This document shows, in pieces, positions 5,904 through 51,685 of a DNA stretch of 64,000 nucleotides. How positions within the stretch are numbered: the stretch's first letter is position 1; each line of letters begins with the position of its first letter. The notes under the pieces were generated by a model. The model worked only from the letters and a program-made list of their open reading frames with translations, was not told the DNA's origin and ran no database searches. A program made the translations under genes and the position numbers. Source of the stretch: Octopus bimaculoides (taxonomy: Eukaryota); contig NC_068982.1 in assembly GCF_001194135.2 (NCBI RefSeq), positions 14,627,071 to 14,691,070 of the forward strand, in the 5' to 3' direction.

Positions 5904-6365
5904 AGGCACAGGAGTGGCTGTGTGGTAAGTAGCTTGCTTACCAACCACATGGTTCCAGGTTCATTCCCACTACGTGGCACCTTGGGAAAGTGTCTTCTAC
6001 TATAGCCTCGGGCCGACCAAANNNNNNNNNNACGTGGCACCTTGGGAAAGTGTCTTCTACTATAGCCTCGGGCCGACCAAAGCCTTGTGAGTGGATTTGG
6101 TAGACGGAAACTGAAAGAAGCCTGTCGTATATATGTATGTATATGTGTGTATATGTTTGTGCCTGTTTGTTCCCCCAGCATCGCTCTACAACCGATGGTG
6201 GTGTGTCTACATCCCCGTAACTTAGCGGTTCAGCAAAAAGACCGATAGAATAAGTACTAGGCTTCCAAAGAATAAGCCCTGGGGTCGATTCGCTCGATTA
6301 AAAGGCGGTGCTCCAGCATGGTCACAGTCAAATGACTGAAACAAGTAAAAGAGTAAAAGAGTAAA
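5904..6365 (+). mobile_element. SINE family A, full length (contains a 10-N gap)
   Basis: tRNA-like head, internal (TA/TG)n, tail ...gactgaaacaagtaaaaga. Confidence 0.9.
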
Positions 6366-6923
6366 TCACATCTTATGGTTATAAATAAGGAAAAGACATA
6401 CCGGGTGGGGTAGGACTGATTAGGGTGGTCGTGACTGGAATGCCTTTAATTATAAGTCTGCTTCATCAGGGACTAAACAATAGCAACAACAACAACAACA
6501 TCATTATAATCGCTGACAATAACACTGCTAAAACTACCGCCAGTACAGATATCTTTGCTGCTATCATCACCACCATAACCACTACCTCCGACTCCACTGC
6601 CAACACCACAGAAACAAACAATACTACAGTCACCGACCCAACCACCACCACCACCACCACTGCCGCCATCACTCTGTCTGCTGTTCCCGCTGCAACCACC
6701 ACCTTTTTTCTACTGCTGCACTTGCCGCTGCTGCTTCGAATACTGCTGCCAGTGCAGAAAACTCTGCTGCTACTGCTGCTGCTACTACTACAACTGCAGC
6801 GACATCAGTCACCATTCTACCTGGTCTCTTACATAAATGTAATCACATGCTGTGCAAGTTAGCTTAACAGATATATTACATATGAACATATATATATATG
6901 ATATAATATGATATAATACATAC

Positions 6924-12566: not shown

Positions 12567-13059
12567 CAAGAGAGAGAACACATACCCACATACCTACATA
12601 TATTTAAAAAGACAAATATGCATACAAACATTCCACATGTTTGTGTAGTGTCAATATTATTTGGAAGACAGACAAAAATTGTTGATAAGACAATTTCCAC
12701 TCTGGTACCTACAATCCTAGAATGCACACTCACCTTTTTGCCATTACTAGTATTGCCAGCCCAACACACAACAGAACATCAGCCTCTCAACAAGATTCGC
12801 AACTCTCATCATCATCCTCATTCAACGTCTGTTTTTCATGCTGGTATGGGTCGACCATTTTGGCAGGAGCTGGCAAGCCAGCATACGGCACGAATGTCTA
12901 TTGTTAGTTTTGGCATGGTTTCTGAGACTGGGTGCCCTTCCTAATGCCAAGCGTTTTACCCTAATTTTCAAAAATTCAAGTGAACACTATAATTAGAAGC
13001 ATAAAAACCTGCAAAACTTCTATGAGATTTGAAGGTTCAACAGTTTTGAAAAATACACA

Positions 13060-13208
13060 GTGGACTGTGTGGTAAGAAGCTTGCTTCCCAACCATATGTT
13101 GCCAGGTTCAGTCCCACTGCAGAGCACATTGGGCAAGTGTCTTCTACTATAGTTTCAAGCTGACCAAAGCCTTGTGAGTGGATTTGGTAGATGGAAACTG
13201 AAAGAAAC

Positions 13209-13259
<51 letters not shown>

Positions 13260-13470
13260 TTGTGTGTGTGTCTGTGTTTGTTTGTCGCACTATCGCTTGA
13301 TAACCAATGTTGGTGTGTTTACATCGCCCTAACTTACCTGTTCAGCCAAAAGTGACCGATAGAATAAGTACCAGGCTTACAAAGAATAAGTCCCGCGTTC
13401 AATTTGTTCAACTAAAGGTGGTGCTCCAGCATGGCCACAGTCAAATGACTGAAACCAAATAAAAGAATTA
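13060..13470 (+). mobile_element. SINE family A
   Basis: Same head, internal microsatellite and tail as other family-A copies. Confidence 0.85.
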
Positions 13471-14926
13471 AATGCTCCAGTCATTACTTTTCTTTTAATC
13501 TTTTGTTTTTTTTTAACGACCTTACACTGACTAGCCATAATAGGTAATAAAATATCCAACCCAAGGCAGAGGGTATGCACCTTTATACATGTGTGTATAT
13601 ATCCCTGTATACATCCATGTATACATCCGCTTTTCCCACGTTTTATTCTGCTGACATTCATGCATGAGTTTAGCCGTGGCATTGTTTTGTCTTACATCAG
13701 TAGGAAACACAGCCGTGCAAAGGACTGCCAAAACTAAGTACATACAACTAGTTAAATGAAGTGTGCTTACGACTCTTTACATTCTGTTATTACCAGAAAT
13801 AGTGCAAAGCGTGTTTGGGGATAACAAGAATAGGAAAAAAAAAATATAAAAACTAAAAACTGGGTATAAACTGGAAAAAATATAATAAAAAGAATAAAAA
13901 ATGAAACAAAATTAGTTGTCTTCTATCCTTGTCAGTGATCTTCTGAGATAAGAATAGAAATTGCATCATGGAAATAGAAAAATTCAAGTCAGTCTACTCT
14001 GTCAGTATCACTGCTGAAGCTTAACTGATGTAAAAAACATAAAAAAATGTTTTTCTGAAAGATTACAGAATTGGCAACAAAAAGACTGTGTTGCTTATGT
14101 ATTCCATGTGTGAGACAACTCAAATCTTTAACTAACAAGAAATATCTTAATCATTTTAAATCAGTTTTATCTCCTCAATAAGGGGTGTCTATTGTGCTTT
14201 AGTTCCATTCCATTCATCTTTGTCTTCTTAAATGTCAACCTTTCAAAACCTGGTATAAGACCACAGCCTCCTACTGCCTCTCAAATACTGCCCCTATCAT
14301 TTAGTGATTTAATTTTTTTTTCCCCTTCTTCCTGTCCTTTTTCTTGTCTTACAAGTTAATTGGCAACCTCACTAGCGCCAGTGGCATGTTAAAAGCATCC
14401 AGTACACTTTGTAAAGTGGTTGGCATTAAGAAGAGCATCCAGCCACAGAAACTATGCCAGAGCTGACACTGGAACTCAACATGGGCCTCCAGCTCACTAG
14501 ATCCTCTCAAATCATCCAATGAATGCTAGCATGGAAGATGATGTAGGCAACAAGACTTAAATTTGGTTCATTTAGTCCAGAATTGAAAACTTAAATCAAT
14601 TAAATTACTATATGCTGTTTATAATACCTGTCTTTCAGAAGGAGAAAATAAATAAAATAAGAAGGCCCTAAAAAAATTCAAGATTAATTGTTGTGAGAAG
14701 AGAAAATCTGCTGTATCAAGTCTTGTCTCTTGTCTGTGAGCAAAGAATAGAGGAAGTATTGTGGTTATCATTCTGATTCCAGGAAATCGACAATGAATCG
14801 ACAGTCATTAGAATATTGGTGGGAGCATCTGCCCTGTGCTCCTCACTCTGGGTCTCTGTGCTGGGAATTTAAATTCTTCTGAGGTTCAGTTTACTTTTCA
14901 GCCTTCACTCTCAATAGGGAAAAAAT

Positions 14927-17653: not shown

Positions 17654-17863
17654 CTCAACAAGCAGTGTTGGTGTGTTTACATGCCCATAACTTGGCAGTT
17701 TTAAGAAAGGAGACCAATAAAGTAAGCAGCTGACTGCAAACAAAAAAAAAAGTTTGGGGACCAATTTGTTCAACTTAAACCCTTGAATATAGTGCCCCAG
17801 CATGGCCGCAGTCCAAAGGCTGAAAGAAAGACAATAAAAGGAAATAAAAGATAGTTTACTCAC

Positions 17864-18066
17864 TTAATGTTTTTCAAAAAGGGGATTACATTCAGCCAAA
17901 AGTTTTCTGTCAATTTTGGTTTCCCAGACAGCATAAGTCCTTTAAGATTTTTCCCATATGTCAGCAAGAAGTTGTAAATTGAATTCTCAGACAATGCATT
18001 GGTATGACTAATATCAATGGCACGTAATTTGATGAATTTTCCTGTTTCCATTAGTTTTTCTAATAT
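17864..18066 (-). CDS. Internal coding exon C of the same LRR protein gene
   Basis: Acceptor tttgaacag|ATATTA (AG at 18068-18067), donor ATTAA|gtgagt; 203 nt, phase 0-2, in frame with exon B. Encodes ILEKLMETGKFIKLRAIDISHTNALSENSIYNFLLTYGKNLKGLMLSGKPKLTENFWLNVIPFLKNI(K), continuing the LRR pattern. Confidence 0.9.
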
Positions 18067-18321
18067 CTGTTCAAAGAAAATTAATAGAATAAATGAAACA
18101 TGATAAATGAAGAAACAATTATCTTTCAAATCATTTTTAAGGTTTGATTCAATATTATATAAATGGAATAGAAAAGATTTAGGCTTCTTGATTTAATATT
18201 GTTTTGCATTGATATAGTTTGGCAGTATTTGATAGACCTGGCTGTCACAGTGGTAGTGATGATGTCAGATGGTGCAACCATCATTGGCAGTTCACACTCC
18301 ACCCAATTCCATTGCCAATGC

Positions 18322-31217: not shown

Positions 31218-31831
31218 AGCAGATAACCGATAACAGTAATATTGGTGATGGCGATGATGATAGTGATATTGGCGATGATGGAATGGATGTAATGATAACC
31301 TTGTTGAGGAGGAAAGATGTGATGACGATGGTGACAGTGAAGGTGATGAAGAAGAAGAATAGCTCCGATGATAATGATCTTCATAAAGATTATGATAATG
31401 ATCAAGGTTATGATGGACATGGTATTTTAAAGAAATATATAATAAAAAAATAAAACACTGATATATCTGTTCATTCATAACATATTCTTCAGATTTGAAC
31501 TTGAATATCTGACCATTGTTGCTTTCCATCATCAGAAAGCATCTATTCCCTTTAGATGATGTATGTTCATATCACATATGATTTACTAGTGTAAGGGAAC
31601 TTTGAGACACCATGGGGTTTCAACCTTATTGTGTGTCTCATCAGTCAAAGTTACCATGAACTGGTGAATCTAACAAGGCTCTTGTCTAAAGAAATCAGCA
31701 AACAAGTTATTCGCTGATGTTTGCCAAACAATTTTGCAGCAGACCATGCCATCAATGCAGGAATTAATGTAATGTAAATCAGTTTTAAAAAAGAAAAAAG
31801 AAAACAAAATCAAATAACAAGAAATATTTAC

Positions 31832-31998
31832 CGTATCTGAAAAGAATTCACAGTACCCAAGTCCAAGATAGATAAATCCAGGCATTCGAAGTAGAATATT
31901 CTCCAGGCACTCTTTTGAAAGTTCCGTAGATGTTAAATCCAATTCATGGATGATAGACTGTTCCCATGGAACGGCCATCATAAAGCTATCTTCCACTC
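31832..31998 (-). CDS. Internal coding exon B of the same LRR protein gene
   Basis: Acceptor tttctttag|GAGTG (AG at 32000-31999), donor ACG|gtaaat; 167 nt, phase 1-0, joins exon A in frame (G+GA = Gly). Encodes VEDSFMMAVPWEQSIIHELDLTSTELSKECLENILLRMPGFIYLGLGYCEFFSDT. Confidence 0.9.
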
Positions 31999-32140
31999 CT
32001 AAAGAAATAAATGAAGACAATTCATTACTTTGGACACAGGTACATTTTATTCAGTTACCATTTTAAATAAGAAATTCATTGCTGCTTTGAGGGTTTTTGC
32101 TGTTTTTATTTAATTTCAAAGAGACTAGGATATACTCTTC

Positions 32141-32560
32141 TACTCTTTTACTTGTTTCAGTCATTTGACTGTGGCCATGCTGGAGCACCACCTTTAGTCG
32201 AGCAAATCGACCCCAAGACTTATTTTTTGGATGCCTAGTATTTATTCTATCGGTCTCTTTTGCCGAACCGCTAAGTTACAGGGACGTAAACACACCAGCA
32301 TTGGTTGTCAAGCGATGCTGGCGGGGGGGACAAACACACAAACATATATACACACACACGCATACATACATATATATATATATATATACATATATACGAC
32401 GGGCTTCTTTCAGTTTCCGTCTACCATATCCACTCACACGGCTTTGGTCAGCCCGAGGCTATAGTAGAAGATACTTGCCCAAGGTGCCATGCAGTGGGGC
32501 TGAACCCGGAACCATGTGGTTGGTAAGCAAGCTATTTACCACACAGCCACTCCTACGCCT
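32141..32560 (-). mobile_element. SINE family A, full length
   Basis: Reverse complement of the family-A consensus seen at 5904, 35580 and 38255. Confidence 0.9.
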
Positions 32561-32887
32561 ATATAGTTAACCAAACTGAAACAAAGTGGAAATTATTTAT
32601 TGTTAAAAAAAAAAATGATAGGATTTAGAGAAAGCTAACCTTGTGAGATTTAAAGCCATCTCTGAGAGGATTGGAAGTAAATTTAGTAAACCATTTTACT
32701 CTGACACACTACTGCTTTGTTTCTCGACAAAGCAGACAGTAAAAATTTTTATGTGGGCACTGGGGACAAAAGGAGCAGTAGGGGACAATAGATGCATCTG
32801 TGCAGGCTTTGTTTAGTCTTTGGCATGGTCATGTGGTAGGAAGTTTGTTTCCCAACCATACAATTCCATATCCAGTCCAACTTTTGT

Positions 32888-35060: not shown

Positions 35061-35579
35061 AAAATATATAATATACACACACGTCTGTATATATTTCTAA
35101 TGATACATATGTTTATTTTGTTGCACTATCCACGATGGCTTAAAACACTATTAGATGTGTGTTTTGGTGTAAGCGTTCATAAAATCTTAGTGACATTAGT
35201 ATTCTTCTCATGAATGTTTCCCTATCACATCCCTCAAACAACGAAACTTCACTTCACCATAAAACCTCAAACCATTTGTATGTAACACTTGAAGGAAATC
35301 AACCACTGCCAAAACCTTAGGGCATTCATCCTCCATTGCAACACTTGAATCAAGAAAAATTTTGGCTGTCTTTTTAAATTCAACATTTCTACCATCCATG
35401 GACATACTTAGAAAATCAAAAAACATTACAGCATGCATGATTTTCAGAAACATTTTTCACTCTCAGAATTGTTAAAACAGGAATAAATTACCCCTGTTAG
35501 TTGTTAGATATCAAAACACCGAATCCTTCAAAAAAAAATTCCAGGATTGAAATTTGTCAAAACTATTCCTGACAGACAT

Positions 35580-35852
35580 AGGCGCAGGAGTGACTGTGTG
35601 GTAAGTAGCTTGCTTATCGACCGCATGGTTCCGGGTTCAGTCCCACTGCATGGCACCTTGGGCAAGTGTCTTCTACTATAGCCTCAGGCTGACCAAAGCC
35701 TTGTGAGTGGATTTGGTAGACGGAAAATGAAAGAAGCCCATCGTATATATGTATATATATATATATATNNNNNNNNNNNNNNNNNNNNNNNNNNNNNNNN
35801 NNNNNNNNNNNNNNNNNNNNNNNNNNNNNNNNNNNNNNNNNNNNNNNNNNNN

Positions 35853-35889
<37 letters not shown>

Positions 35890-36095
35890 TTGTGTGTCTG
35901 TGTTTGTCCATCCCACCATCGCTTGACAACCGATGCTGGTGTGTTTACATCCCCGTAACTTAGCGGTTCGGCAAAAGAGACTGATAGAATAAGTACTAGG
36001 CTTACAAAAAAAAAGTCTTGGGGTCAATTTGTTCGACTAAAGGTGGTGCTCCAGCATGGCTACAGTCAAATGACTGAAACAGGTAAAAGAAAAAA
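35580..36095 (+). mobile_element. SINE family A (gap in the internal microsatellite)
   Basis: Head aggcgcaggagtgactgtgtggtaag; tail gactgaaacaggtaaaaga. Confidence 0.9.
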
Positions 36096-36536
36096 GAAAT
36101 GCCTTTTTCTTTATAGGTACTTCCCTATTTACTTTTCTGGGGTTTGTTTTTTTTGTTTGTTTGTTTTTTTAGTTTTATTCTGTGCAGTGTGAATTCACAT
36201 TGCTGTCTTTCTTTACTCGACTAATCACTGCTTTCTGCCACCTTCCTTCTCACCCCATTCCTATTTCACCCTTTCCTGATGAGCTGTACTGCACCTGAGC
36301 ATTGTATACAATAAGCTCGTTATTATTTCATATGTCACAAGATAGGCATTTTTCTTTTATCTTTCAAATTGAAGCTAAGATTTCACGCTTCTTGCTAAGA
36401 GAATCGCTATTAAATTTATGGAAACCTCCTGGTTATATAAACTATATACATAAAATAATGCCAGATAATAATGCAAAGAAAAAATATTTAATCACATCAA
36501 AAGTATTAAAATATTAAAATATTAAAATATTTTTAC

Positions 36537-36803
36537 CAGTATGTTGAAGCAGCAAAGATTTCAGCTTCTTGCACTTTTGTACGAGCATACTGAAAGATGA
36601 ACCTTTGACACGCAAGCAGAAGTTTAAGGCTAAAACTTCAAGATGAATGGAGTTGGAAGCCAGCATTTCCACATGGCTATCATCTACAAATCCGATGCCA
36701 TACATATTGATGATTCGTAAGTTTGGAGTATGAGCTTTTATTTTACTGATGTTGATGACTTCATAGTTCTCTTCTTCGGCCTCGCTTGACAATTCAAAAG
36801 TAC
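36537..36803 (-). CDS. Internal coding exon A of an LRR (F-box/LRR-like) protein gene
   Basis: Acceptor ttttccag|GTACT (AG at 36805-36804), donor ACTG|gtaaaa (GT at 36536-36535); 267 nt, phase 1-1. Encodes (G)TFELSSEAEEENYEVINISKIKAHTPNLRIINMYGIGFVDDSHVEMLASNSIHLEVLALNFCLRVKGSSFSMLVQKCKKLKSLLLQHT(G), with LxxLxL cysteine-containing LRR periodicity. Family call is from recalled similarity to invertebrate F-box/LRR proteins; no search was run. Confidence 0.9.
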
Positions 36804-36895
36804 CTGGAAAATAAAGATAACAAAAAAAAAAAAAATTTATTTTAGTTTAAATTGGTTGACTTAGTTTTAATATATTTAAATTAATCATTTGTTAA

Positions 36896-37353
36896 CCCTT
36901 TTGTTACCATATTTCTGTTGAGATGCTGTGTTTCTTTTAATTAATTCTAAATATGACAAAAAATTTACTAAAATAACTTCATTATTTTTAAGCTAGTGTT
37001 AGGAACATAAATTGTGACTAAGGTTTGGTGGAAGATTTTAATTCGAAACTTTTGAAAACAAGACATTTGTACTACAAAGCCAGAAGCAGTTTCAGGCAGG
37101 CTGGTATCAAAAGGATTAAATTAATCATTTGTTAACCCTTTTGTTACCATATTTCTGTAGAGATGCTTTGCATTTCTTTCAATTAATTTTAAATATAACA
37201 AAGAATTAAGTAAAATAACTTAGTTATCATTCAGCTAGTGTTAAGAACATAAATTGTGACTAAGGTTTAGTGGCCGATTTTGAGAACTTTTGAAAACAAG
37301 GCATTTGTACTACAGAGCCAGAGGCATTTTCAGACAGGTTGGTATCAAAACAG
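36896..37353. mobile_element. Tandem array 1 of TTAA (piggyBac-type) MITE, 2 units (36896-37115, 37136-37353)
   Basis: Units run TTAA|CCCTTTTGTTAC...G.TA[T/A]CAAAAGGG|TTAA (right ends slightly degenerate); linker ATTAATCATTTG at 37120-37131 and also at 36880-36891 before unit 1. Confidence 0.85.
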
Positions 37354-38254
37354 TTAATGTAAGAAGGTGGTGAACTGACAAAATTGTAAGAGCTTTGGAA
37401 AAAATACTTTGCAGTATTTCTTGTGGTTCATTACATTCTGAATTTAAATTCTACCAAGGGTGACTTTGGCTTTCATTCTTTCGAAGTCAATGAACTAATT
37501 ACCAGTCAAATACTGGGGTTGATGCAATTGACTTTGCCTGTTCCCTTCCAAATTGTTGGCCTTGAGCCAAAATTAGAAAATATATATGTTTATTTAATGC
37601 CAAAGTGAACGTAAAACATGTTTATTATTATTAGTAATATATTATTATTATTAGTAATTATTATTAGTAAAATAAAGTAAGGTGTTGGCTTAGCAGAGTC
37701 ATTATAATATTGAATAAAATATTTTGTGGTATATAGTTTCAGGAATTTATGTTCTAAGTTAAAACCCTACCTTGGTTCAATTTGCTTTTCATCCTTTTAG
37801 CATCAATAAAATAAAAGAACCAATGCCCTAAAAAATTGTGCTTAATGCAGTTATTAGGAATCAACATATTCAATGCATTAATCAAATGGGAAACAATCTT
37901 AGTCAATGGTAAATATTATTTTGATCATTTCAGCATCTAGGTAAGACAACTCTAAGTATGTTTCTATCTTATAATGAATTCATCAGCAAAATACAGCCTT
38001 CAACGTACTGACAAATAATGGTGAAAAATCATTAGGTTTATACACAGATTGTACACTAAATTGTACACTAAATTGTACCACAGAGAAATAGAAACTGAGG
38101 TTAAAAACTTAGAATGAAATAAGTTCAAGTTGTTGTTATCAAAATTTCCTTTATATAAACACTACGGCAATGAGGCCTTTTATGTTTGAATGGTGATGAT
38201 GTGACATGTATATTCACTTTTAAAATTGCAGTCTATCATTCATATTAAACAAAT

Positions 38255-38656
38255 AGGCATAGGAGTGGCTGTGTGGTAAGTAGCTTGCTTACCAACCACA
38301 TGGTTCTGGGTTCAGTCCTACTACGTGGCACCTTGGGCAAGTGTCTTCTTCTATAGCCTCGGGCTGATCAAAGCCTTGTGAGTGGATTTGGTAGATGGAA
38401 ACTGAAAGAAGTCTGTCGTATATATGTATATATATGTATATATATATGTTCGTGTGTCTGTATTTGTCCCCCCAACATCGCTTGACAACCGATGCTGGTG
38501 TGTTTACGTCCCCATAACTTAGCAGTTCGGCAAAAGAGACTGATACAATAAGTACTAGGCTTACAAAGAATAAGTCCTAGGGTCAATTTGCTCAACTAAA
38601 GGTGGTACTCCAGCATTGCCACAGTCAAATGACTGAAACATGTAAAAGAGAGTAAA
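38255..38656 (+). mobile_element. SINE family A, full length
   Basis: Matches the other family-A copies along its length. Confidence 0.9.
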
Positions 38657-38949
38657 TCATTGAATTGGGGAATTTTATTTTTGCACCTCTATTTTTTTCT
38701 AGTACATACATTGGAAGTACCAGCCTAACAAAATATGCATGTACACAATTTTAAACAGAAGTCAGTTGGTTTTAAATTCCCAAGGATGATTAAATGTGTA
38801 CAAAGTTCTTCTTGAGCTGCTAAAAAATAATGAAGAACTCAGCATTTTAGATAAACGTATGACATTATTAGAAATAGAACATTTTTATATGTAATATACC
38901 TTCTATTTTGTCCTCTATTCTAGTAAATTCAACTGATTAATCTTAATTA

Positions 38950-39180
38950 TCCTCTGTGTGGCATAAACTTGGGCACTATACAGAGCCATGGTGAAAAAAA
39001 CAGAAGCCTTTGAAATGTAGATTGAGTAGAATAAGCTGGAAAGGCAGGGGGACAAATGCTGCAACACTAGGAAGACTGAAAGTTCAAGGACACCCATTGT
39101 TGAGAATCAAATCTACTGGGTCTGTCAGACAACCTCAGGGGAGACCCTGAAGAGAAAGGGTAAGATATTGAAGAGTTTGC
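38950..39180 (+). mobile_element. RTE-clade LINE 3' fragment, decayed
   Basis: *TWALYRAMVKKTEAFEM and RISWKGRGTNA resemble the RTE motif ETW..K..EAFEMW..RRMLRISW...TN. Confidence 0.6.
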
Positions 39181-40215
39181 AAATAGCAACAAAAGAACTT
39201 TGACTAACAAACAACTAATTGATATTTTTAACCAACACGTTAAACAAACAATCAATTAGTTAGTTGGTTAGATATTTAACCAACTGAATAACAATAAAGA
39301 AGTGATAGTCAACCAGTGCATGTGTTTATTATTATTGGTGTAACAACCTTCCCAAGACACAAGATTTGTTTCAACACACGAATTTACACCAAGAATTTTG
39401 TAAACCAAATGCAAAAATAAAGTTACTGGAAAACAGAAATTTTTCAATAAAAATACAGTATATCCAAACAGAAATTAATGAAAATGTATATTTAGGATGT
39501 TTTTCTTGCTGTAATTGATGTGATGGCATTTAATGTGAACTCTAAATAGAGTTGTTAGAGAACAAATGGAAACTAAACAAACCTTAACTAAAAGCCATGT
39601 AATATTAAGAACACTTCTTACACAGAATAGATTTGTTCTCAATGCATTACTCCCTGCGAGACATCGAACATTGCATGCACAAATTATTGCATTTGCAATT
39701 TGTTAGATGAAAGATTTATCACAGCACGAGAAAACTATAGATTTTTGTACAAAGAAATACATATAAGAAAATAATGGCTATTAGATCTGAAGAACGGTAA
39801 TGCAAACAGCTCAAGTCAAGAAGTGTTGAGTTTCTAGAAAAGATTGAATTGTTTTTCTAAGGTATGTATCATTTATCTTCATCTTGCTCTCTGGAATTCA
39901 CCACCACAACCCCCCACCTCTCTCTCTCTCTCTCTCTCTCCCAATGATTCTGATAAAAGTTTGTCCTGAGTGGAACCAGTACACAGAAATACAAAGAAAA
40001 GAAACTGATACAGAATATAAATGCTAAGGCAGATACAATGTAATAGATACTCAATAAAAGAAGGAAAAAATAAAATAGCAAAAATATAGTAAACTGTTGA
40101 TGAGCTTTTGCTTAACCTAAGGTCAGCCCTGACAGAACAGATATGATCAAAGGAGCTCTGACCATGACCATCTCATCAAAATTTTTTGAAGTGTATCTAG
40201 AAATACATTATTTAA

Positions 40216-41163
40216 CCCTTTCGTTAACTGTATTTATTTCAATATGCTCTGTGTTTCTTTCAATCAATTTTAAATATAACAAAGAACTTAGTAAAATAAC
40301 TTTGTTATCATTAAGCTAGTGTTAGGAACATAAATTATGACTATGGTTTGGGGGAAGATTTTAATTCAAAACTTATGGAAACAAGGCATTTGTACTACAG
40401 AGCCAGAGGCAGTTTGAAATGGGTTGGTATCAAAAGGGTTAAATTAATCATTTGTTAACCCTTTTGTTACCATATTTCTGTTAAGATGCTCTGTGTTTCT
40501 TTCAATTAATTTTAAATATAACAAAGAATTTAGTAAAAAATACTTAGTTATCATTAAGCTAGTGTTAGGAACATAAATTGTGACTAAGGTTTGGTGGAAG
40601 ATTTTAATTCAGAACTTATGAAGACAAGACATTTGTACTACAGAGCCAGAGGCAATTTGAAATGGGTTGGTATCAAAAGGGTTAAATTAATCATTTGTTA
40701 ACCCTTTTGTTACCATATTTCTGTTAAGATGCTCTGTGTTTCTTTCAATTAATTTTAATATAACAAAGAATTTAGTAAAATAACTTAGTTATCATTCAGC
40801 TAGTGTTAGGAACATAAATTGTGACTAAGGTTTGGTGGAAGATTTTAATTCAGAACTTATGAAGACAAGACATTTGTACCACAGAGCCAGAGGTAGTTTC
40901 AGCCAGGTTGGTAACGAAAGGGTTAAATTAATCATTTGTTAACCCTTTTGTTACCATATTTCTGTTGAGATGTTCTGGGTTTCTTTCAATTAATTTTAAA
41001 TATAACAAAGAATTTAGTAAAATAACTTAGTTATCATTCAGCTGGTGTTAGGAACATAAATTGTGACTAAGGTTTGGTGGAAGATTTTAATTTAAAACTT
41101 ATGGAAACAAGACATTTGTACTCAGAGCCAGAGCTGGTTTCAGCCGGGTTGGTAACAAAAGGG
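40216..41163. mobile_element. Tandem array 2 of TTAA MITE, 4 units (40216-40438, 40459-40681, 40702-40922, 40943-41163)
   Basis: 221-223-bp units with CCC...GGG termini and TTAA flanks; identical 12-bp linkers at 40443-40454, 40686-40697 and 40927-40938; period ~243 bp. Confidence 0.9.
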
Positions 41164-41327
41164 TTAATGTGTTTTTGTTTATTAAAATAGCAGAATGTGT
41201 TTTGAGAGAAGTTTGGCAACTCTTTCTCAATAGGTTCTTTGTTATAAAATTAGAAAACAAAAGGAAGAATAAAACATCAACAAAAACAAATGTAAAAAAT
41301 ATATGTAAACTGTTTTTATTCTTATGT

Positions 41328-41670
41328 TCTTTTATTTGTTTCAGTCATTTGACTGTGGCCATGCTGGAGCACCGCCTTTAGTTGAACAAATCAACCCCAG
41401 GACTTATTCTTTGTAAGCCTAGTATTTATTTTATCGGTCTTTTTTGCTGAACTGCTGAGTTACGGGGATGTAAACACCAACATCGGTTGTCAAGTGATGG
41501 AGATGGGGGGGAAGAAACACAGAACACAAACACACACACACACATATATATACAAAGGGCTTCTTTCAGTTTCCATCTACCAAATCCACACGCAAGGCTT
41601 TGGTCGGCCCGAGGCTATGTATTAGAAGACACTTGCCCAAGGTGCCATGCAGTGGGACTGAACCTGCGAC
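41328..41670 (-). mobile_element. SINE family A, head truncated
   Basis: Reverse complement of the family-A body and tail. Confidence 0.85.
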
Positions 41671-41860
41671 CAAGTGGAAAGGGAAAATAAAAAGAAAGGA
41701 GTAAACTCAAGAATTAAAAACTTCTCGGTCAATAAAAAGGGAGCCTCATAATCTAACGAGAGTTTCTACATGGTCCCCCAACTTACTAGAAATAGCAGCT
41801 AAATCTCCCTTATATCATATCCTACAGTTTTTAATAGGGAAGTAATTCCTGAAATATTAA

Positions 41861-42299
41861 ACCTTTGTGGCTAAATTTCTGTTGAAATACATTACCTTTC
41901 TTTTAATTCATTTTGAAAGCAATGAAGAATTCACTAAATTAACTTAGTCATCATCTTGGTGAACGGATCATACTTTAAAATGAAATTTAGACAGAAGCTT
42001 TTAATCTAGATCAATTTAACCCATTAGCATTCGAACCAGCCATATCTGGCTCACATACTCTGCATGTTTTATGTTCAAACTGGCCAGATCCAGCCTCTCA
42101 CACCTGCCCTACAATGTAATTCTAAATAAATAATTAAATCATTGAAATCTTGAAGCTAAGAGAAAATGCAAGATTAATTCAAAATGATGTGAATAAATAA
42201 GCATTATATTTGACAGGGTAATCTGAATGCTAAGGGGCTAAACAGGAAGTTTGTATCATAGACCCAGGGTCAGTCTCAGGTAGGTCGTTATCAAAAGGT
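41861..42299. mobile_element. Older diverged TTAA MITE containing a nested second TTAA MITE (42020-42237)
   Basis: Outer element ttaa|acctttgtgg...tatcaaaaggt|ttaa; inner element ttaa|cccattagcattc...gaatgctaagggg|ctaa with inverted termini. Confidence 0.65.
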
Positions 42300-42305
42300 T
42301 TAAAA

Positions 42306-43169
42306 CAGTGGTTCTCAAACAGGGTCTATGTAATCCCTAAAGGTTCATACAAGATTTTTGTGGGTCCATGCAGTGAAATAGTAAACTGAGGATCCACAGT
42401 AGTATTTTAAGGGCTCCTGGAAAAATTTTTGTTTTAGATGTATGTATTGGTATGTTTTGCAAGAAACAACTAAGTTTCTGTCTCTAACATTTTACATAAT
42501 TCAACCTACACAAGTTAATGTCATCATCATCATCGTTGTCGTCGTTTAGCGTCCGCTTTCCATGCTAGCATGGGTTGGACAATTTGACTGAGGACTGGTG
42601 GACCAGGTGGCTACACCAGGCTCCAATCTGATTTGGCAGAGTTTCTACAGCTGGATGCCCTTCCTAACACCAACCACTCTGAGAGTGTAGTGGGTGCTTT
42701 TACATGCCACCAGCACGAAGGCCAGTCAGGCAATACTGGCAATGGCCACGCTCAAAATGGTGTATTTTACGTGCCACCTGCACAGGAGCCAGTTCGGCGG
42801 CACTGGCAATGATCTCGCTCGAATGTCTTTACACATGTCATCCAGCACAAGTGCCAGGGAGGCGATGCTGGGCACAAGTGCCATGACGATTTCGCTTTTG
42901 CTTGTCCCAACAGGTCTTTGCATGAAGGAGACGATGTTGGCATGGGTGCCAGTCATCGAATCTAATTCGATTTCGATTTCTCTTGCCTCAACAGGTCTTT
43001 GCAAGCGGAGTTTAGTGTCCAATGAAGGAGGGTGTGAAAAACAAATTAGGAATTTTGAAAGAGGTTTCTATAAAACTAGTTTTTAAACATCGAATGGCTA
43101 GTGGGGTCCACCAGAACAAAGTAGCAATCAAACAGGTCCACAGATAAAAAAAATTGTTGGGAACGCCTG
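42306..43169. mobile_element. hAT-type non-autonomous element with a nested family-E repeat (~42521-43030)
   Basis: TIRs cagtggttctcaa / ttgggaacgcctg; 8-bp target duplication gtttaaaa (42298-42305) / ggttaaaa (43170-43177). Confidence 0.75.
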
Positions 43170-43987
43170 GGTTAAAAGGTGGGACAGTCCTAGCAGCAAT
43201 GAAATGCTTCTGATCATATCTGTTTAATCAGGGTCTGACCTGGAGTGAAACGATAACAATAAAATCAACAACAACAACAACAATAGCAACGTTTTATGAG
43301 AAAGAATAATGTTATGTAAGACACATAGCATTATTCAACAACAAAAAAATGGGGCATTGTCTATTGTTCATATAAACCTGACCTTTATAAATTCACAAGG
43401 GGATTAACATTTTTTAACAAGATGCTGCACATCTGTAACACACATGGTCATACAAATGTGTGTGTGTGTGTGTATGTGTGTGTATGTGCGCACACACACA
43501 CATATATATAAAATATAAATATATACATATATAAAATATAAATATACATATATTAAATGTATACATATATAAATATACATATATTAAATATATACATATA
43601 TAAATATACATATATAAAATATGAATATATATTTATTTATATTTATATACTTTGGGGTTAAAGTATAAATGGAAATTTTATTCACAATATATCCAAAGCT
43701 GACTTGGATATTTAGCAGACTGATCAAACGAATCTCATATTTGGAATTTACATCTAATTATAGGCTATGATGTCTCTAGACATCTAATTATCAGGGTATG
43801 AAATGCTTCCTATATTTGCAGATCTAGCCAATCCATGCCAAAAACTGTAAAGGTGAGACATCAAAGTAACGATAAATTATGATTGAAGGATGTGTGTGTG
43901 TCTGTGTCTTTGCATGTGTGTGTGTGTATGTGTGTGTGTGTGTGTGTGTGTGCATGTGAATGTGTATGTATGTATGTGTATACATGG

Positions 43988-44023
<36 letters not shown>

Positions 44024-44289
44024 ATGTGTATGTCTGTGTGGAGGCATGTGTGAGAGTGTGTGTGTGTGTGTGCATGCATGCATGTGCATGCATGTAAATT
44101 AGGATACGTGATCACATCAAAGCATGTTATGGTCATCGTTCTTTCTGGACATCAATAGGGAACTAGTAACCACGGATACACAGACACTAAAATGATGATG
44201 ATGATGAGGAGGAGGAGGCGGAGGAGGAGGAGGATGTTATTTATTATTGTGTTGATCATGATATAATAATTGTTGCTATTGTTGTTTAA

Positions 44290-44717
44290 CCCTTTTGTTA
44301 CCATATTTCGTTTGAGATGCTCTGTTTCTTTTAATCAGTTTTAAATATAACAAAGAATTTAGTTATCATTAAGCTAGTGTTAGGAACATAAATTGTGACT
44401 AAGGTTTGGTGGAAGATTTTAATCCAGAACTTTTGAAATCAAGACATTTGTTCTACAGAGCCAGAGGCAGTTTCAGCTGGGTTGATAACAAACGGGTTAA
44501 ATTAATCATTTGTTAACCCTTTCATTACCGTATTTCTGTTGAGATGCTCTGTGTTTCTTTCAATTAATTTTAAATATAACAAAGAATTTAGTAAAATAAC
44601 TTAGTTATCATAAATTGTGACTAAGGTTTAGTGGAAGATTTTAGTTCAGAACTTTTGAAAATAGAACATTTGTACCACAGACCAGAGGCAGTTTCAGCTG
44701 GGTTCATATTAAAATGG
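44290..44717. mobile_element. Tandem array 3 of TTAA MITE, 2 units (44290-44496, 44517-44717)
   Basis: Same element with small internal deletions; linker at 44501-44512; inserted at a TTAA near the start of a family-F repeat (TTAA duplicated at 44286 and 44718). Confidence 0.85.
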
Positions 44718-44721
44718 TTAA

Positions 44722-45132: not shown

Positions 45133-45866
45133 GAAATTTTTGACAAATATTTAGTTCCTTACATAGAATTTTTGTCAAATATTTAGTTCTTTAGAATTTT
45201 TGTCAAATATTTAGTTCTTTAGAATTTTTGTCAAATATTTAGTTCTTTAGAATTTTTGTCAAATATTTAGTTCTTTAGAATTTTTGTCAAATATTTNNNN
45301 NNNNNNNNNNNNNNNNNNNNNNNNNNNNNNNNNNNNNNNNNNNNNNNNNNNNNNNNNNNNNNNNNNNNNNNNNNNNNNNNNNNNNNNNNNNNNNNNNNNN
45401 NNNNNNNNNNNNNNNNNNNNNNNNNNNNNNNNNNNNNNNNNNNNNNNNNNNNNNNNNNNNNNNNNNNNNNNNNNNNNNNNNNNNNNNNNNNNNNNNNNNN
45501 NNNNNNNNNNNNNNNNNNNNNNNNNNNNNNNNNNNNNNNNNNNNNNNNNNNNNNNNNNNNNNNNNNNNNNNNNNNNNNNNNNNNNNAGTTCTTTAGAATT
45601 TTTGTCAAATATTTAGTTCTTTAGAATTTTTGTCAAATATTTAGTTCTTTAGAATTTTTGTCAAATATTTAGTTCTTTAGAATTTTTGTCAAATATTTAG
45701 TTCTTTAGAATTTTTGTCAAAGATTTAGTTCTTTAGAATTTTTGTCAAATATTTAGTTCTTTAGAATTTTTGACAAATATTTAGTTCTTTAGAAATTTTG
45801 TCACATATTTAGTTCTTCAGAATTTTTGTCAAATATTTAGTTCTTTAGAATTTTTGTCAAACATTT
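45133..45866. repeat. 28-bp minisatellite (ATTTAGTTCTTTAGAATTTTTGTCAAAT)n spanning an N-gap (45297-45587)
   Basis: Period of 28 measured directly (45181 to 45209); near-identical units on both sides of the gap. Confidence 0.95.
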
Positions 45867-50360: not shown

Positions 50361-51600
50361 ATAAAATGATTTTCAATCCAGACACAAGAGCTAATATTTC
50401 TAAGAGGCAAGACATGAGAAGTAATTCCTTTATTCTTCTATTCTTTTAGTGATTCCAGTCAATAGCCTGCGGCCATGCTGGAGCACTACCTTTATAAATA
50501 TGATGCTCATTATCTTTTTCAAGGATATTTGTCTCTTAATTGAAGTGAAATGTCTCCATTAAATTATAATGCTTTGGATTACTAATCATATCCTTAGTAC
50601 ATATCGGTTTCAAATTTTGGCACAAGGCCAGCAATTTTAAGAGATGGAGTAAGATGATTACATCAACCCCAGTGTCCAACAGGTACTTATTTTATTGACC
50701 CTGAAAGGTAGAAAGGCAAAGATGACCTCAGCAGAATTTGAAACCAGAACATAGAAACAGACAAAATACGACAATGTATTTTGCCCAGCATGCAACTGAT
50801 TCTGCCAGCCTGCTGCCTTAGCTTTAAGGTATACTAGCACTATAGCCTGGCTTTGCTCAGGATTAAGTTAGGATTACCTGAATAATACCATCAATTGAGG
50901 CAAATTTGGCACCCAGACTTAAGTTTTGTAAGAGGAATTTAGAGGCCTGTCTTCTCCCGCAGAGATGTGAGAGTCAGATCTCTCCTTTGGAAAACATGAA
51001 CAGTTTCATAACATTGTTTACAAAATAATAGCTGATCGTTTGCGAAGGAGCGTGTCTACAGTCAACACTTAGGATTTTGTGGTCATCGTCGTCATTGTGG
51101 TCTTGAGGAGGAGGAGAAGGAGAAATAGATAGGTAGTCACTTGTTAAGTTTACAAGACCACATGAAAGTACATGGATTAGTCGTTGTGTTCTAGAGCAAA
51201 ACTCTTCATTTCACATCGCTCCTGTCCACTCAGCTGTTAAAACATAAGTAATCATGTGACGGAATGGTGTCCTGAGAGTCAGAAAGCTGACCCTCTGAGT
51301 CTGTGTGATTTAGGAAGGATGTTTATCCTATCTTATCCTTTTTATAAGACTATCAAAATCACAATCAAAATCAAATTCGCTGACATGGCCGATGACAGCC
51401 CTGCCTGACTGGCACCCGTGCCAGTAGATCATTAACAGCACCATCCGAGCGAGATCGTTACCAGGGTTGCTGATTGGCTCTTGTGCCAGTGGCACATAAG
51501 AAGCATCATTTGAGTGTGATCGTTACCAGCGTCGCCTTACTGGTACTTGTGCCAGTGGCACGTGAAAAACAACATTCAAGCGAGGTCGTTGTCAGTGCCG

Positions 51601-51685
51601 CTAATTACTAAATTCTTTGTTATATTTTAAATAATTCAAAGAAACACAGAGCATCTCAAAATAAATGCAGTAAAGAAAAGGTTAA
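51601..51685 (-). mobile_element. Truncated reverse-oriented end of the same TTAA MITE
   Basis: Reverse complement reads ttaaccttttctttactgcatttattttgagatgctctgtgtttc..., matching the unit left end; abuts a family-E repeat. Confidence 0.65.

What the first reader, a model, noticed from the sequence alone, without database searches (positions are those of the whole stretch)
36876..44721. TTAA MITE arrayed at three loci, always joined by one invariant 12-bp linker
Seen: eight ~222-bp CCC...GGG units in arrays of 2, 4 and 2. All six linker copies (36880, 37120, 40443, 40686, 40927, 44501) are exactly TTAA-ATTAATCATTTG-TTAA, while the units differ from each other by many substitutions and small indels. 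Known: piggyBac-superfamily elements have CCC/GGG ends, insert into and duplicate TTAA, and normally land as single copies. Inference: the mobile species is a multimer or a circle whose junction carries captured flank, or the linker is a preferred re-insertion site. Either would be an unusual mode of MITE propagation, on the way to a MITE-derived satellite.
Basis: partly seen in the sequence, partly recalled or inferred. Interest (0 to 1): 0.72.

Follow-up and report, generated by a model that had tools for sequence, protein, structure and literature searches.

The report
TTAA MITE multimers sharing one spacer
A small piggyBac-type mobile element lies here as two head-to-tail pairs and a foursome, always separated by the same 12 bases, most likely because a founding pair was moved as one piece, which is a variant of known transposon behaviour.

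Summary
Eight 201-223 bp units sit on the + strand in three arrays of 2, 4 and 2. Each has a 14/16 terminal inverted repeat (CCCTTTTGTTACCA) and TTAA on both sides. The arrays contain six exact copies of TTAA-ATTAATCATTTG-TTAA, against 0.05 expected by chance.

Two qualifications apply. Only five linkers join units; the sixth (36876-36895) is an orphan at the left edge of array 1. Linker invariance is only moderately unexpected (P about 0.03 for 12 bp, 0.004 for 20 bp).

The array flanks are not homologous, so this is not a segmental duplication. Identical 12-mers at three loci cannot arise independently, so the junction is identical by descent. Units are about equally diverged within and between arrays, so the multimer state is as old as the insertions.

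The best reading is a composite multimeric MITE. A founding dimer trapped 12 bp of non-element DNA, and the multimer was then moved by its outer ends, probably by local hops. Array 2 later expanded locally.

Rolling-circle concatemers are not excluded. The linker as a re-insertion target is unlikely.

No genome-wide copies could be reached with these tools, so generality is untested. Precedents include coral CMITE arrays, TE dimers and macrotransposons.

The parts
36876..36895 (+). Orphan linker: TTAA-ATTAATCATTTG-TTAA with no unit on its left. It forms the left edge of array A1.
   Evidence: No unit homology lies left of 36876; an exon lies about 55-70 bp away.
36896..37115 (+). Unit A1u1 (220 bp). 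It has the 5' CCC; the 3' end is mutated to GGA. It is 7.6% from the consensus.
37116..37135 (+). Junction linker of A1 (TTAA + 12 bp + TTAA).
37136..37357 (+). Unit A1u2 (218 bp) plus its right TTAA (37354-37357). The 3' GGG is mutated to CAG.
40212..41167 (+). Array A2: TTAA-u1-[linker 40439-40458]-u2-[linker 40682-40701]-u3-[linker 40923-40942]-u4-TTAA. The units are 223, 223, 221 and 221 bp. Adjacent units are 91-95% identical.
44286..44721 (+). Array A3: TTAA-u1 (207 bp, 14-bp deletion)-[linker 44497-44516]-u2 (201 bp, 20-bp deletion, 3' TGG)-TTAA.
41857..42303 (+). Old monomer of the same family, about 68% identical to the consensus. It is TTAA-flanked, has no linker on either side, and is split by a nested unrelated TTAA MITE at 42016-42241.
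51605..51685 (-). 3'-truncated copy covering the first 82 bp (about 85% identity). TTAA lies at 51682-51685 and no linker precedes its 5' end.

Best explanation
The units are copies of a non-coding piggyBac-type MITE about 220 bp long. It targets TTAA and has a 14-bp inverted repeat, CCCTTTTGTTACCA.

Origin of the linker (inferred): once, at a founder locus, two head-to-tail copies came to enclose 12 bp of ordinary DNA (ATTAATCATTTG) bounded by two TTAAs. This could have happened by two insertions into TTAAs 12 bp apart. It could also have happened by a 241-bp tandem duplication between TTAAs.

Spread (inferred): the transposase then paired the left end of one unit with the right end of a unit further along. 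That cut out and re-inserted the whole multimer, linker included, into new TTAA sites as a composite or 'macro' MITE. The linkers are identical because they descend from that one junction.

What is shown:
- The anatomy of the arrays.
- Identity of the junction at three loci with non-homologous flanks.
- TTAA at every edge.
- A star-like unit phylogeny.

What is inferred:
- Mobilisation by the outer ends.
- Local hopping: three arrays within 7.8 kb on the same strand.
- Later local growth of array A2 from 2 to 4 units by unequal exchange or slippage.
- The orphan linker at the left of A1 is either a donor-site scar or native flank. As a scar, it would remain after a unit or sub-multimer was excised precisely at its TTAA. 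As native flank, it would mark the founder locus.
For: - Six exact 20-mers against 0.05 expected.
- TIR and TTAA anatomy.
- No homology in the immediate flanks of the three arrays. The only shared nearby repeat is a SINE-like family with at least 16 copies in the window, at varying distances and orientations. A weak 60-bp similarity between the A2 left flank and the A3 right flank did not reach E 0.1.
- All six array edges fall exactly on a TTAA abutting a unit end (five) or a linker end (one).
- Mean identity within arrays is 0.90 against 0.88 between arrays. A1u1/A1u2 are only 85.6% identical and A3u1/A3u2 88.2%.
- There are only 2 array-specific shared substitutions. Of 210 random partitions, 67 do as well. 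The units of an array therefore separated about when the arrays did.
- The four A2 units share a derived base (column 181) and show an adjacency gradient of 91-95%. This fits later local expansion.
- An older monomer and a truncated copy lack the linker.
- Precedents: coral piggyBac-related CMITEs form tandem arrays, some with spacers. Five of their six families share the terminal CCCTTT (PMC2872659). A hobo array carries one 8-nt junction and an R1 array carries one 33-nt junction, each derived from a single dimer (PMC5932611).
Against: - All evidence comes from one 8-kb neighbourhood. No independent genomic copy, empty site or polymorphism could be examined.
- If the junction is a neutral passenger, it should have decayed like the units. 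Zero changes in 72-140 bp is mildly improbable (P 0.03 to 8e-4).
- There is no significant first-unit versus last-unit signature across arrays.
- A1 needs an extra event (excision or founder status) to explain its leading linker.
- No autonomous piggyBac partner or matching TIR lies elsewhere in the window. Pfam was run on only six ORFs, so the window was not scanned exhaustively for a transposase.
Confidence: 0.5

Rival explanations
1. Rolling-circle or eccDNA route. A 241-bp circle (unit + TTAA + linker + TTAA) is formed, for example popped out of a dimer by recombination. It is copied into a concatemer, and pieces running from a left end to a right end are integrated by the transposase.
For: - It gives arrays of any copy number with identical junctions and TTAA/TIR edges, as seen.
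- The star-like phylogeny fits units that were identical at insertion.
- Rolling-circle replication is a standard model for TE-to-tandem transitions (PMC5932611; PMC12628747).
Against: - There is no direct evidence of circles.
- It still needs a pre-existing dimer or flank capture to create the junction.
- It is not separable from the composite model with the data in the window.
- It does not explain the orphan linker any better.
Confidence: 0.15
2. A purely local history. One ancestral array at this locus was redistributed over 8 kb by local rearrangement, such as alternative transposition between ends of different units or unequal exchange. The linker form never spread through the genome.
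For: - Three arrays, plus an old monomer, lie within 7.8 kb, all on the + strand. The remaining 56 kb holds only one truncated copy.
- The orphan linker in A1 looks like a donor scar.
Against: - This is really a sub-case of multimer mobilisation, since pieces still move by their outer ends.
- The shared orientation could reflect the usual antisense bias of elements inside genes. The host gene is on the minus strand.
- There is no flank homology or inversion signature between the loci.
Confidence: 0.15
3. The linker, together with the adjoining TTAACCCTTT, is under constraint. It might be a binding site needed for moving multimers, or a host regulatory site. Its invariance would then be selective rather than by descent alone.
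For: - A 26-bp run, linker plus CCCTTT, is invariant in six copies. No 26-mer inside the units is invariant (0 of 203).
- About 7 changes are expected and none is seen in 140 bp of TTAA plus linker.
- Three of eight 3' GGG ends have decayed.
Against: - The significance is modest and post hoc.
- Inserted copies are normally neutral.
- A 21-bp internal block is equally invariant in the same six units.
- The linker is A/T-rich, and A/T sites change 2.5 times more slowly here.
- No known motif or RNA family matches.
Confidence: 0.08
4. The linker is a hot target. Monomers insert one at a time next to existing copies, building the arrays by repeated transposition.
For: - The 20-mer holds three TTAAs.
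- Insertion-site preference is the main source of TE dimers in Drosophila (PMC5932611).
Against: - An insertion at the linker's outer TTAA adds a unit but no new linker. The internal junctions of a 4-unit array cannot all carry it.
- The first units of A2 and A3 have unrelated left flanks.
- The middle TTAA is never occupied.
- Same-site double insertion predicts a bare TTAA junction, which is not seen.
Confidence: 0.03

Closest known systems
Coral CMITE tandem arrays (piggyBac-related MITEs of Acropora; Wang et al. 2010, PMC2872659)
   Same: - TTAA target duplication and TIRs of 13-14 bp starting CCCTTT.
- Full-length MITEs in head-to-tail arrays, including arrays with spacer sequence between elements.
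- Elements and spacers are similar within an array.
   Different: - CMITEs are about 100 bp and unrelated in sequence.
- Their arrays were read as local replication slippage at single loci.
- Here the same spacer recurs at three loci with unrelated flanks, and units within an array are as diverged as units between arrays.
TE tandem dimers and their expansion (McGurk and Barbash 2018, PMC5932611): P-element and hobo dimers, and the R1 array
   Same: - Head-to-tail copies of a cut-and-paste element with a short non-element junction.
- All junctions of an array are identical because they descend from one dimer (hobo 8 nt, R1 33 nt).
- The dimer then expands to an array by unequal exchange.
   Different: - Those junctions are a single target-site duplication from same-site double insertion, and each array sits at one locus.
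- Here the junction is TTAA + 12 bp + TTAA, which implies two target sites or a duplication.
- Here the junction is found at three loci.
Macrotransposons and alternative transposition of closely linked Ac/Ds elements in maize. The concept is from my own knowledge. The papers were listed but not read.
   Same: The transposase uses the outer ends of two linked elements in direct orientation. It moves both elements plus the DNA between them as one unit, often to nearby sites.
   Different: - A different superfamily (hAT).
- Kilobase-scale intervening DNA.
- Seen as individual genetic events, not as an amplified MITE family.
MITE-to-satellite cases in Xenopus: Xstir (Hikosaka and Kawahara 2004) and miDNA4 (Scalvenzi and Pollet 2014), as summarised in PMC12628747
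   Same: A MITE family exists both as dispersed elements and as tandem repeats, and is seen as a seed of satellite DNA.
   Different: There the repeated part is an internal segment of the MITE. Here whole elements are repeated, with both TIRs and TTAAs.

Membership tests
MITE (non-autonomous TIR element) | Short (under about 800 bp), with terminal inverted repeats and no coding capacity. | tested here: met
   - Units are 201-223 bp.
- The TIR has 12-14 of 16 matches.
- The longest ORFs within the arrays are 36 aa.
- A chimeric query of three unit/linker ORFs found no protein homologue.
MITE (non-autonomous TIR element) | Many dispersed copies in the genome. | not testable with these tools
   The window holds 8 units, 1 old monomer and 1 truncated copy. 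No collection available here holds this genome.
piggyBac superfamily (non-autonomous member) | TTAA target-site duplication flanking the element. | tested here: met
   All 17 TTAAs at unit and linker borders are intact, and each array is flanked by TTAA on both sides. The TSD is always TTAA, so it cannot tell independent insertions apart.
piggyBac superfamily (non-autonomous member) | Ends 5'-CCC...GGG-3' (CCYT motif) within TIRs of about 13 bp. | tested here: met
   - 5' CCCTTT is present in 8 of 8 units.
- 3' GGG is present in 5 of 8; the other three differ by point changes.
- The same CCCTTT start is seen in five of the six coral CMITE families.
piggyBac superfamily (non-autonomous member) | An autonomous partner encoding a piggyBac (DDE_Tnp_1_7) transposase with matching ends. 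| not testable with these tools
   - No other TIR match occurs in the window.
- Six long ORFs gave no Pfam hit.
- The window was not scanned exhaustively and the genome could not be reached.
Composite / macro-transposon (multimer moved by its outer ends) | The same internal junction at two or more loci whose flanks are unrelated. | tested here: met
   Six exact junction 20-mers in three arrays. There is no flank homology apart from a high-copy SINE-like repeat.
Composite / macro-transposon (multimer moved by its outer ends) | Direct evidence that the whole multimer moved: an empty site, an insertion polymorphism, or an excision assay. | not testable with these tools
   No orthologous or allelic sequence could be fetched. 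The exon-based search returned only distant taxa at 70% nucleotide identity.
Same-site double-insertion dimer (McGurk and Barbash model) | The junction consists of exactly one target-site duplication. | tested here: not met
   The junction is TTAA + 12 bp + TTAA in all five joints.
Satellite DNA | Long homogeneous tandem arrays of tens to thousands of monomers. | tested here: not met
   The largest array has 4 units. At most this is a possible seed of a satellite.

The most novel reading that the evidence does not exclude
The multimer with its fixed junction is the form this MITE family actually propagates in, and the junction is functionally required. The junction is a 17-bp-stem, 12-nt-loop palindrome made of right end, linker and left end. 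It might be needed as a transposase assembly site, or as the joint of a circular or concatemeric intermediate. That would be a propagation mode not described for eukaryotic cut-and-paste elements.
Probability: 0.1. Interest if true: 0.7.

Novelty: new variant of a known kind. Interest (0 to 1): 0.38.

Why it matters
If the same junction proves to be spread over the genome, it would be a clean natural example of a MITE family amplifying as a composite multimer. That would link three things usually described separately: double insertion or duplication, mobilisation by outer ends, and the first steps from transposon to tandem repeat.

The orphan linker would then be a rare visible donor-site scar for a footprint-free transposase.

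It also matters for annotation. Repeat libraries would list the dimer, the monomer and a '241-bp tandem repeat' as three families when they are one.

If the junction is confined to this locus, the finding is only a local curiosity beside an FBXL-type exon.

Tried and rejected
Searches that found nothing:
- Exact-pattern scans for the junction in metagenome, prokaryote-genome and viral collections returned 0 hits.
- A scan for a well-conserved 21-bp unit block in metagenomes also returned 0 hits.
- I tried to reach other genomic copies through spurious ORFs. Two window ORFs that cross the linker or the flank are not on record. A chimeric query of three unit/linker ORFs found nothing. A SINE-encoded peptide query found nothing.
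- An exon-based search for orthologous loci found 33 hits, none above 80% amino-acid identity. The fetched loci L001-L006 are about 70% identical in the exon and contain no MITE. They come from distant taxa and are useless for empty-site comparison.
- Rfam found nothing in 35-46 kb. Pfam found nothing for six ORFs.

Readings rejected:
- Segmental duplication of the arrays: no flank homology.
- Association of the arrays with the shared nearby repeat: it is simply a very abundant SINE-like element.
- Homology between the A2 left flank and the A3 right flank: about 60 bp at 70%, not significant.
- One array split by later insertions: all four inner edges fall exactly on unit-end TTAAs, and the linker is missing there.
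- A first-unit versus last-unit signature of a master dimer: only column 119 fits, which is not significant.
- Assembly artefact: the units differ by 5-16% and no N gap lies inside an array.

Correction to notebook entry 3: the 21-bp block CATAAATTGTGACTAAGGTTT is invariant in 7 of 8 units, not 8. A2u1 differs at two positions.


Full report
**1. What is there**

The window is eukaryotic: 35% G+C, scaffold N gaps and abundant microsatellites. I could not verify the species, though a very abundant SINE-like repeat with a tRNA-like head is compatible with that.

The 20-mer TTAAATTAATCATTTGTTAA occurs exactly six times. There is no further match at up to three mismatches, and 0.05 matches are expected.

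Eight full-length units align:
- A1, 36876-37357: linker-unit-linker-unit.
- A2, 40212-41167: four units and three linkers. TRF gives period 241 and 93% matches.
- A3, 44286-44721: two units and one linker.

Each unit starts CCCTTTTGTTACCA and ends with its inverted complement, with 12-14 of 16 matches. TTAA is intact at every border. Units are 201-223 bp and the longest ORFs within the arrays are 36 aa.

The 3' GGG has decayed in three units.

Two more copies exist. One is an old TTAA-flanked monomer, about 68% identical to the consensus, at 41857-42303. It is interrupted by a different TTAA MITE. The other is a 3'-truncated copy at 51605-51685 on the minus strand. Neither has the linker beside it.

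**2. Is the contrast between invariant linker and diverged units real?**

Units are 4.0-9.7% from their consensus and 84-95% identical pairwise. Inside the units, A/T positions change at 4.0-4.6% and G/C positions at about 10%.

With those rates:
- The six 12-bp linkers should carry 3.6 substitutions (P of none = 0.027).
- The six 20-mers should carry 5.5 (P = 0.004).
- All 140 bp of TTAA plus linker should carry about 7 (P = 8e-4).

An empirical control is less impressive. Among contiguous windows inside the six linker-preceded units, 10 of 217 12-mers and 2 of 209 20-mers are also invariant. All lie in one 21-bp block. The invariant run through the linker is 26 columns, because it continues into CCCTTT, and no 26-mer inside the units matches that.

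The contrast is therefore real but moderate. It was also the reason the finding was picked, which discounts it further.

**3. Not a segmental duplication, and not three independent inventions**

The 1.5-kb flanks of the three arrays share nothing adjacent to the arrays. What they share is a repeat of about 400 bp, at varying distances and in both orientations. That repeat has at least 16 copies or fragments in the window, so this is coincidence. A similarity I noticed by eye between the left flank of A2 and the right flank of A3 is about 60 bp at 70% and not significant.

An identical 12-mer between TTAAs at three unrelated sites cannot arise independently. The junction is identical by descent.

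**4. When did the units become neighbours?**

Mean identity is 0.90 within arrays and 0.88 between arrays. The two units of A1 are 85.6% identical, less than either is to A2u2 or A2u3. The two units of A3 are 88.2% identical.

Only two substitutions are array-specific. Of 210 random partitions of the eight units, 67 do as well.

The units of one array have therefore diverged for about as long as the arrays themselves. The multimeric state dates from the insertions. It was not produced by recent local duplication.

A2 is the exception. Its four units share a derived base (column 181). Adjacent units are 91-95% identical, and u1/u2 and u3/u4 share blocks of variants. This fits a later local expansion from a smaller multimer.

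**5. Mechanism**

All six array edges coincide with a TTAA. Five abut a unit end and one abuts a linker end. That is what a piggyBac-type transposase would give if it paired the left end of one unit with the right end of a later unit. Random breakage of a tandem repeat would not give it.

I therefore favour a composite multimeric MITE:
- A founding dimer enclosed 12 bp of non-element DNA between two TTAAs. It arose by two insertions 12 bp apart or by a 241-bp duplication.
- It then moved as one piece.

The three arrays lie within 7.8 kb on one strand. This suggests local hops, though antisense bias within a gene could explain the shared orientation.

The orphan linker at 36876-36895 has two readings, both testable:
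- A unit or sub-multimer was excised precisely at its TTAA, as piggyBac-type excision does. This would make A1 a donor site and A2 and A3 possible products.
- A1 is the founder locus and the left linker is native flank.

All of the mechanism is inferred. Only the anatomy and the relationships between units are shown.

A rolling-circle concatemer integrated by the transposase gives the same products and cannot be separated here.

Step-wise insertion into the linker as a hot target does not work. Each new unit would arrive without a new linker.

**6. A structural aside**

Each junction is a palindrome, made of the right TIR plus TTAA, the 12-nt linker, and TTAA plus the left TIR. As single-stranded DNA it folds into a 17-bp stem with the linker exactly as the loop (-13.9 kcal/mol against -4.3 for shuffles).

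This follows trivially from two ends facing each other. From general knowledge of palindrome instability, a bare-TTAA junction would be a spacer-less palindrome and probably unstable. That may explain why a spaced dimer survived. It does not explain why the spacer is unchanged.

**7. Comparison with what is known**

- Coral CMITEs are piggyBac-related MITEs with TTAA duplications and, in five of their six families, CCCTTT ends. They form tandem arrays, some with spacers, which were ascribed to replication slippage (PMC2872659).
- In Drosophila, TE dimers are common. A hobo array carries one 8-nt junction and the R1 array carries one 33-nt junction, each traced to a single dimer that expanded (PMC5932611).
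- MITE-to-satellite routes are reviewed in PMC12628747.
- Mobilisation of two linked elements by their outer ends is known for Ac/Ds. This is from my own knowledge; the papers listed were not read.
- In octopus, TIR elements are reported to have expanded at a Jukes-Cantor distance of about 0.09, and piggyBac families are reported among recently active elements (PMC13282606). The 4-10% divergence here would fit that, if the window is from an octopus.

What is different here is the combination: whole MITEs, a two-TTAA 12-bp junction, and the same junction at several loci with unrelated flanks.

**8. Limits**

Nothing outside the window could be examined. Pattern scans and ORF-based look-ups found no other copy. 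The only orthologue-like loci fetched are from distant taxa. Whether the linker form is genome-wide, and whether the linker is really less diverged than the units, remains open.

**Verdict**

It is a new variant of known transposon behaviour rather than a new mechanism. Interest is moderate.

Noticed in passing
window 36499-36822, 31829-32035, 17821-18069 (minus strand): These are exons of an F-box/LRR-repeat protein gene. The closest solved structure is FBXL2 (E = 2e-10), and the exons were matched by tblastn with ORFs from a distant orthologue. Array A1 starts only about 55-70 bp upstream, in gene sense, of the CAG acceptor of the 36.8-kb exon. It may therefore lie in the branch-point region. 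No upstream exon was found in the window, so the arrays are either intronic or 5' of the gene.
   Followed up: partly
window, e.g. 38253-38649, 35578-36090, 41328-41677, 32143-32570, 13059-13473, 6032-6368: A repeat of about 400 bp with a tRNA-like head (GGTTCTGGGTTCAGTCC) and an internal microsatellite. It has at least 16 copies or fragments in 64 kb and is probably a SINE. Its peptide-like ORFs have no match in the protein collection.
   Followed up: partly
window 42016-42241: A second, unrelated TTAA-flanked MITE of 226 bp, with ends CCCATTAGCATTC...GAATGCTAAGGGG. It is nested in the old monomer of the studied family. More than one piggyBac-type MITE family has therefore been active here.
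   Followed up: no
window 40662-40722 and the other four junctions: Every unit-linker-unit junction is a palindrome with a 17-bp stem and a 12-nt loop, the linker being exactly the loop. The folding energy is -13.9 kcal/mol, z = -5.75 against shuffles.
   Followed up: partly
alignment columns 135-155 of the units, e.g. window 40569-40589: The 21-bp block CATAAATTGTGACTAAGGTTT is unchanged in 7 of 8 units. Apart from the linker and 5' end region, it is the only other long invariant stretch. It could be an internal transposase-binding site or simply chance.
   Followed up: no
window 51405-51590 and 51605-51685: A 65-bp tandem repeat (2.8 copies) ends 14 bp from the point where the minus-strand MITE copy is truncated.
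   Followed up: no
window 45135-45866: A 28-bp minisatellite (AGTTCTTTAGAATTTTTGTCAAATATTT) of at least 15 copies at 95-96% matches. It is split by a 290-bp N gap and begins right after a SINE-like fragment, 400 bp from array A3.
   Followed up: no
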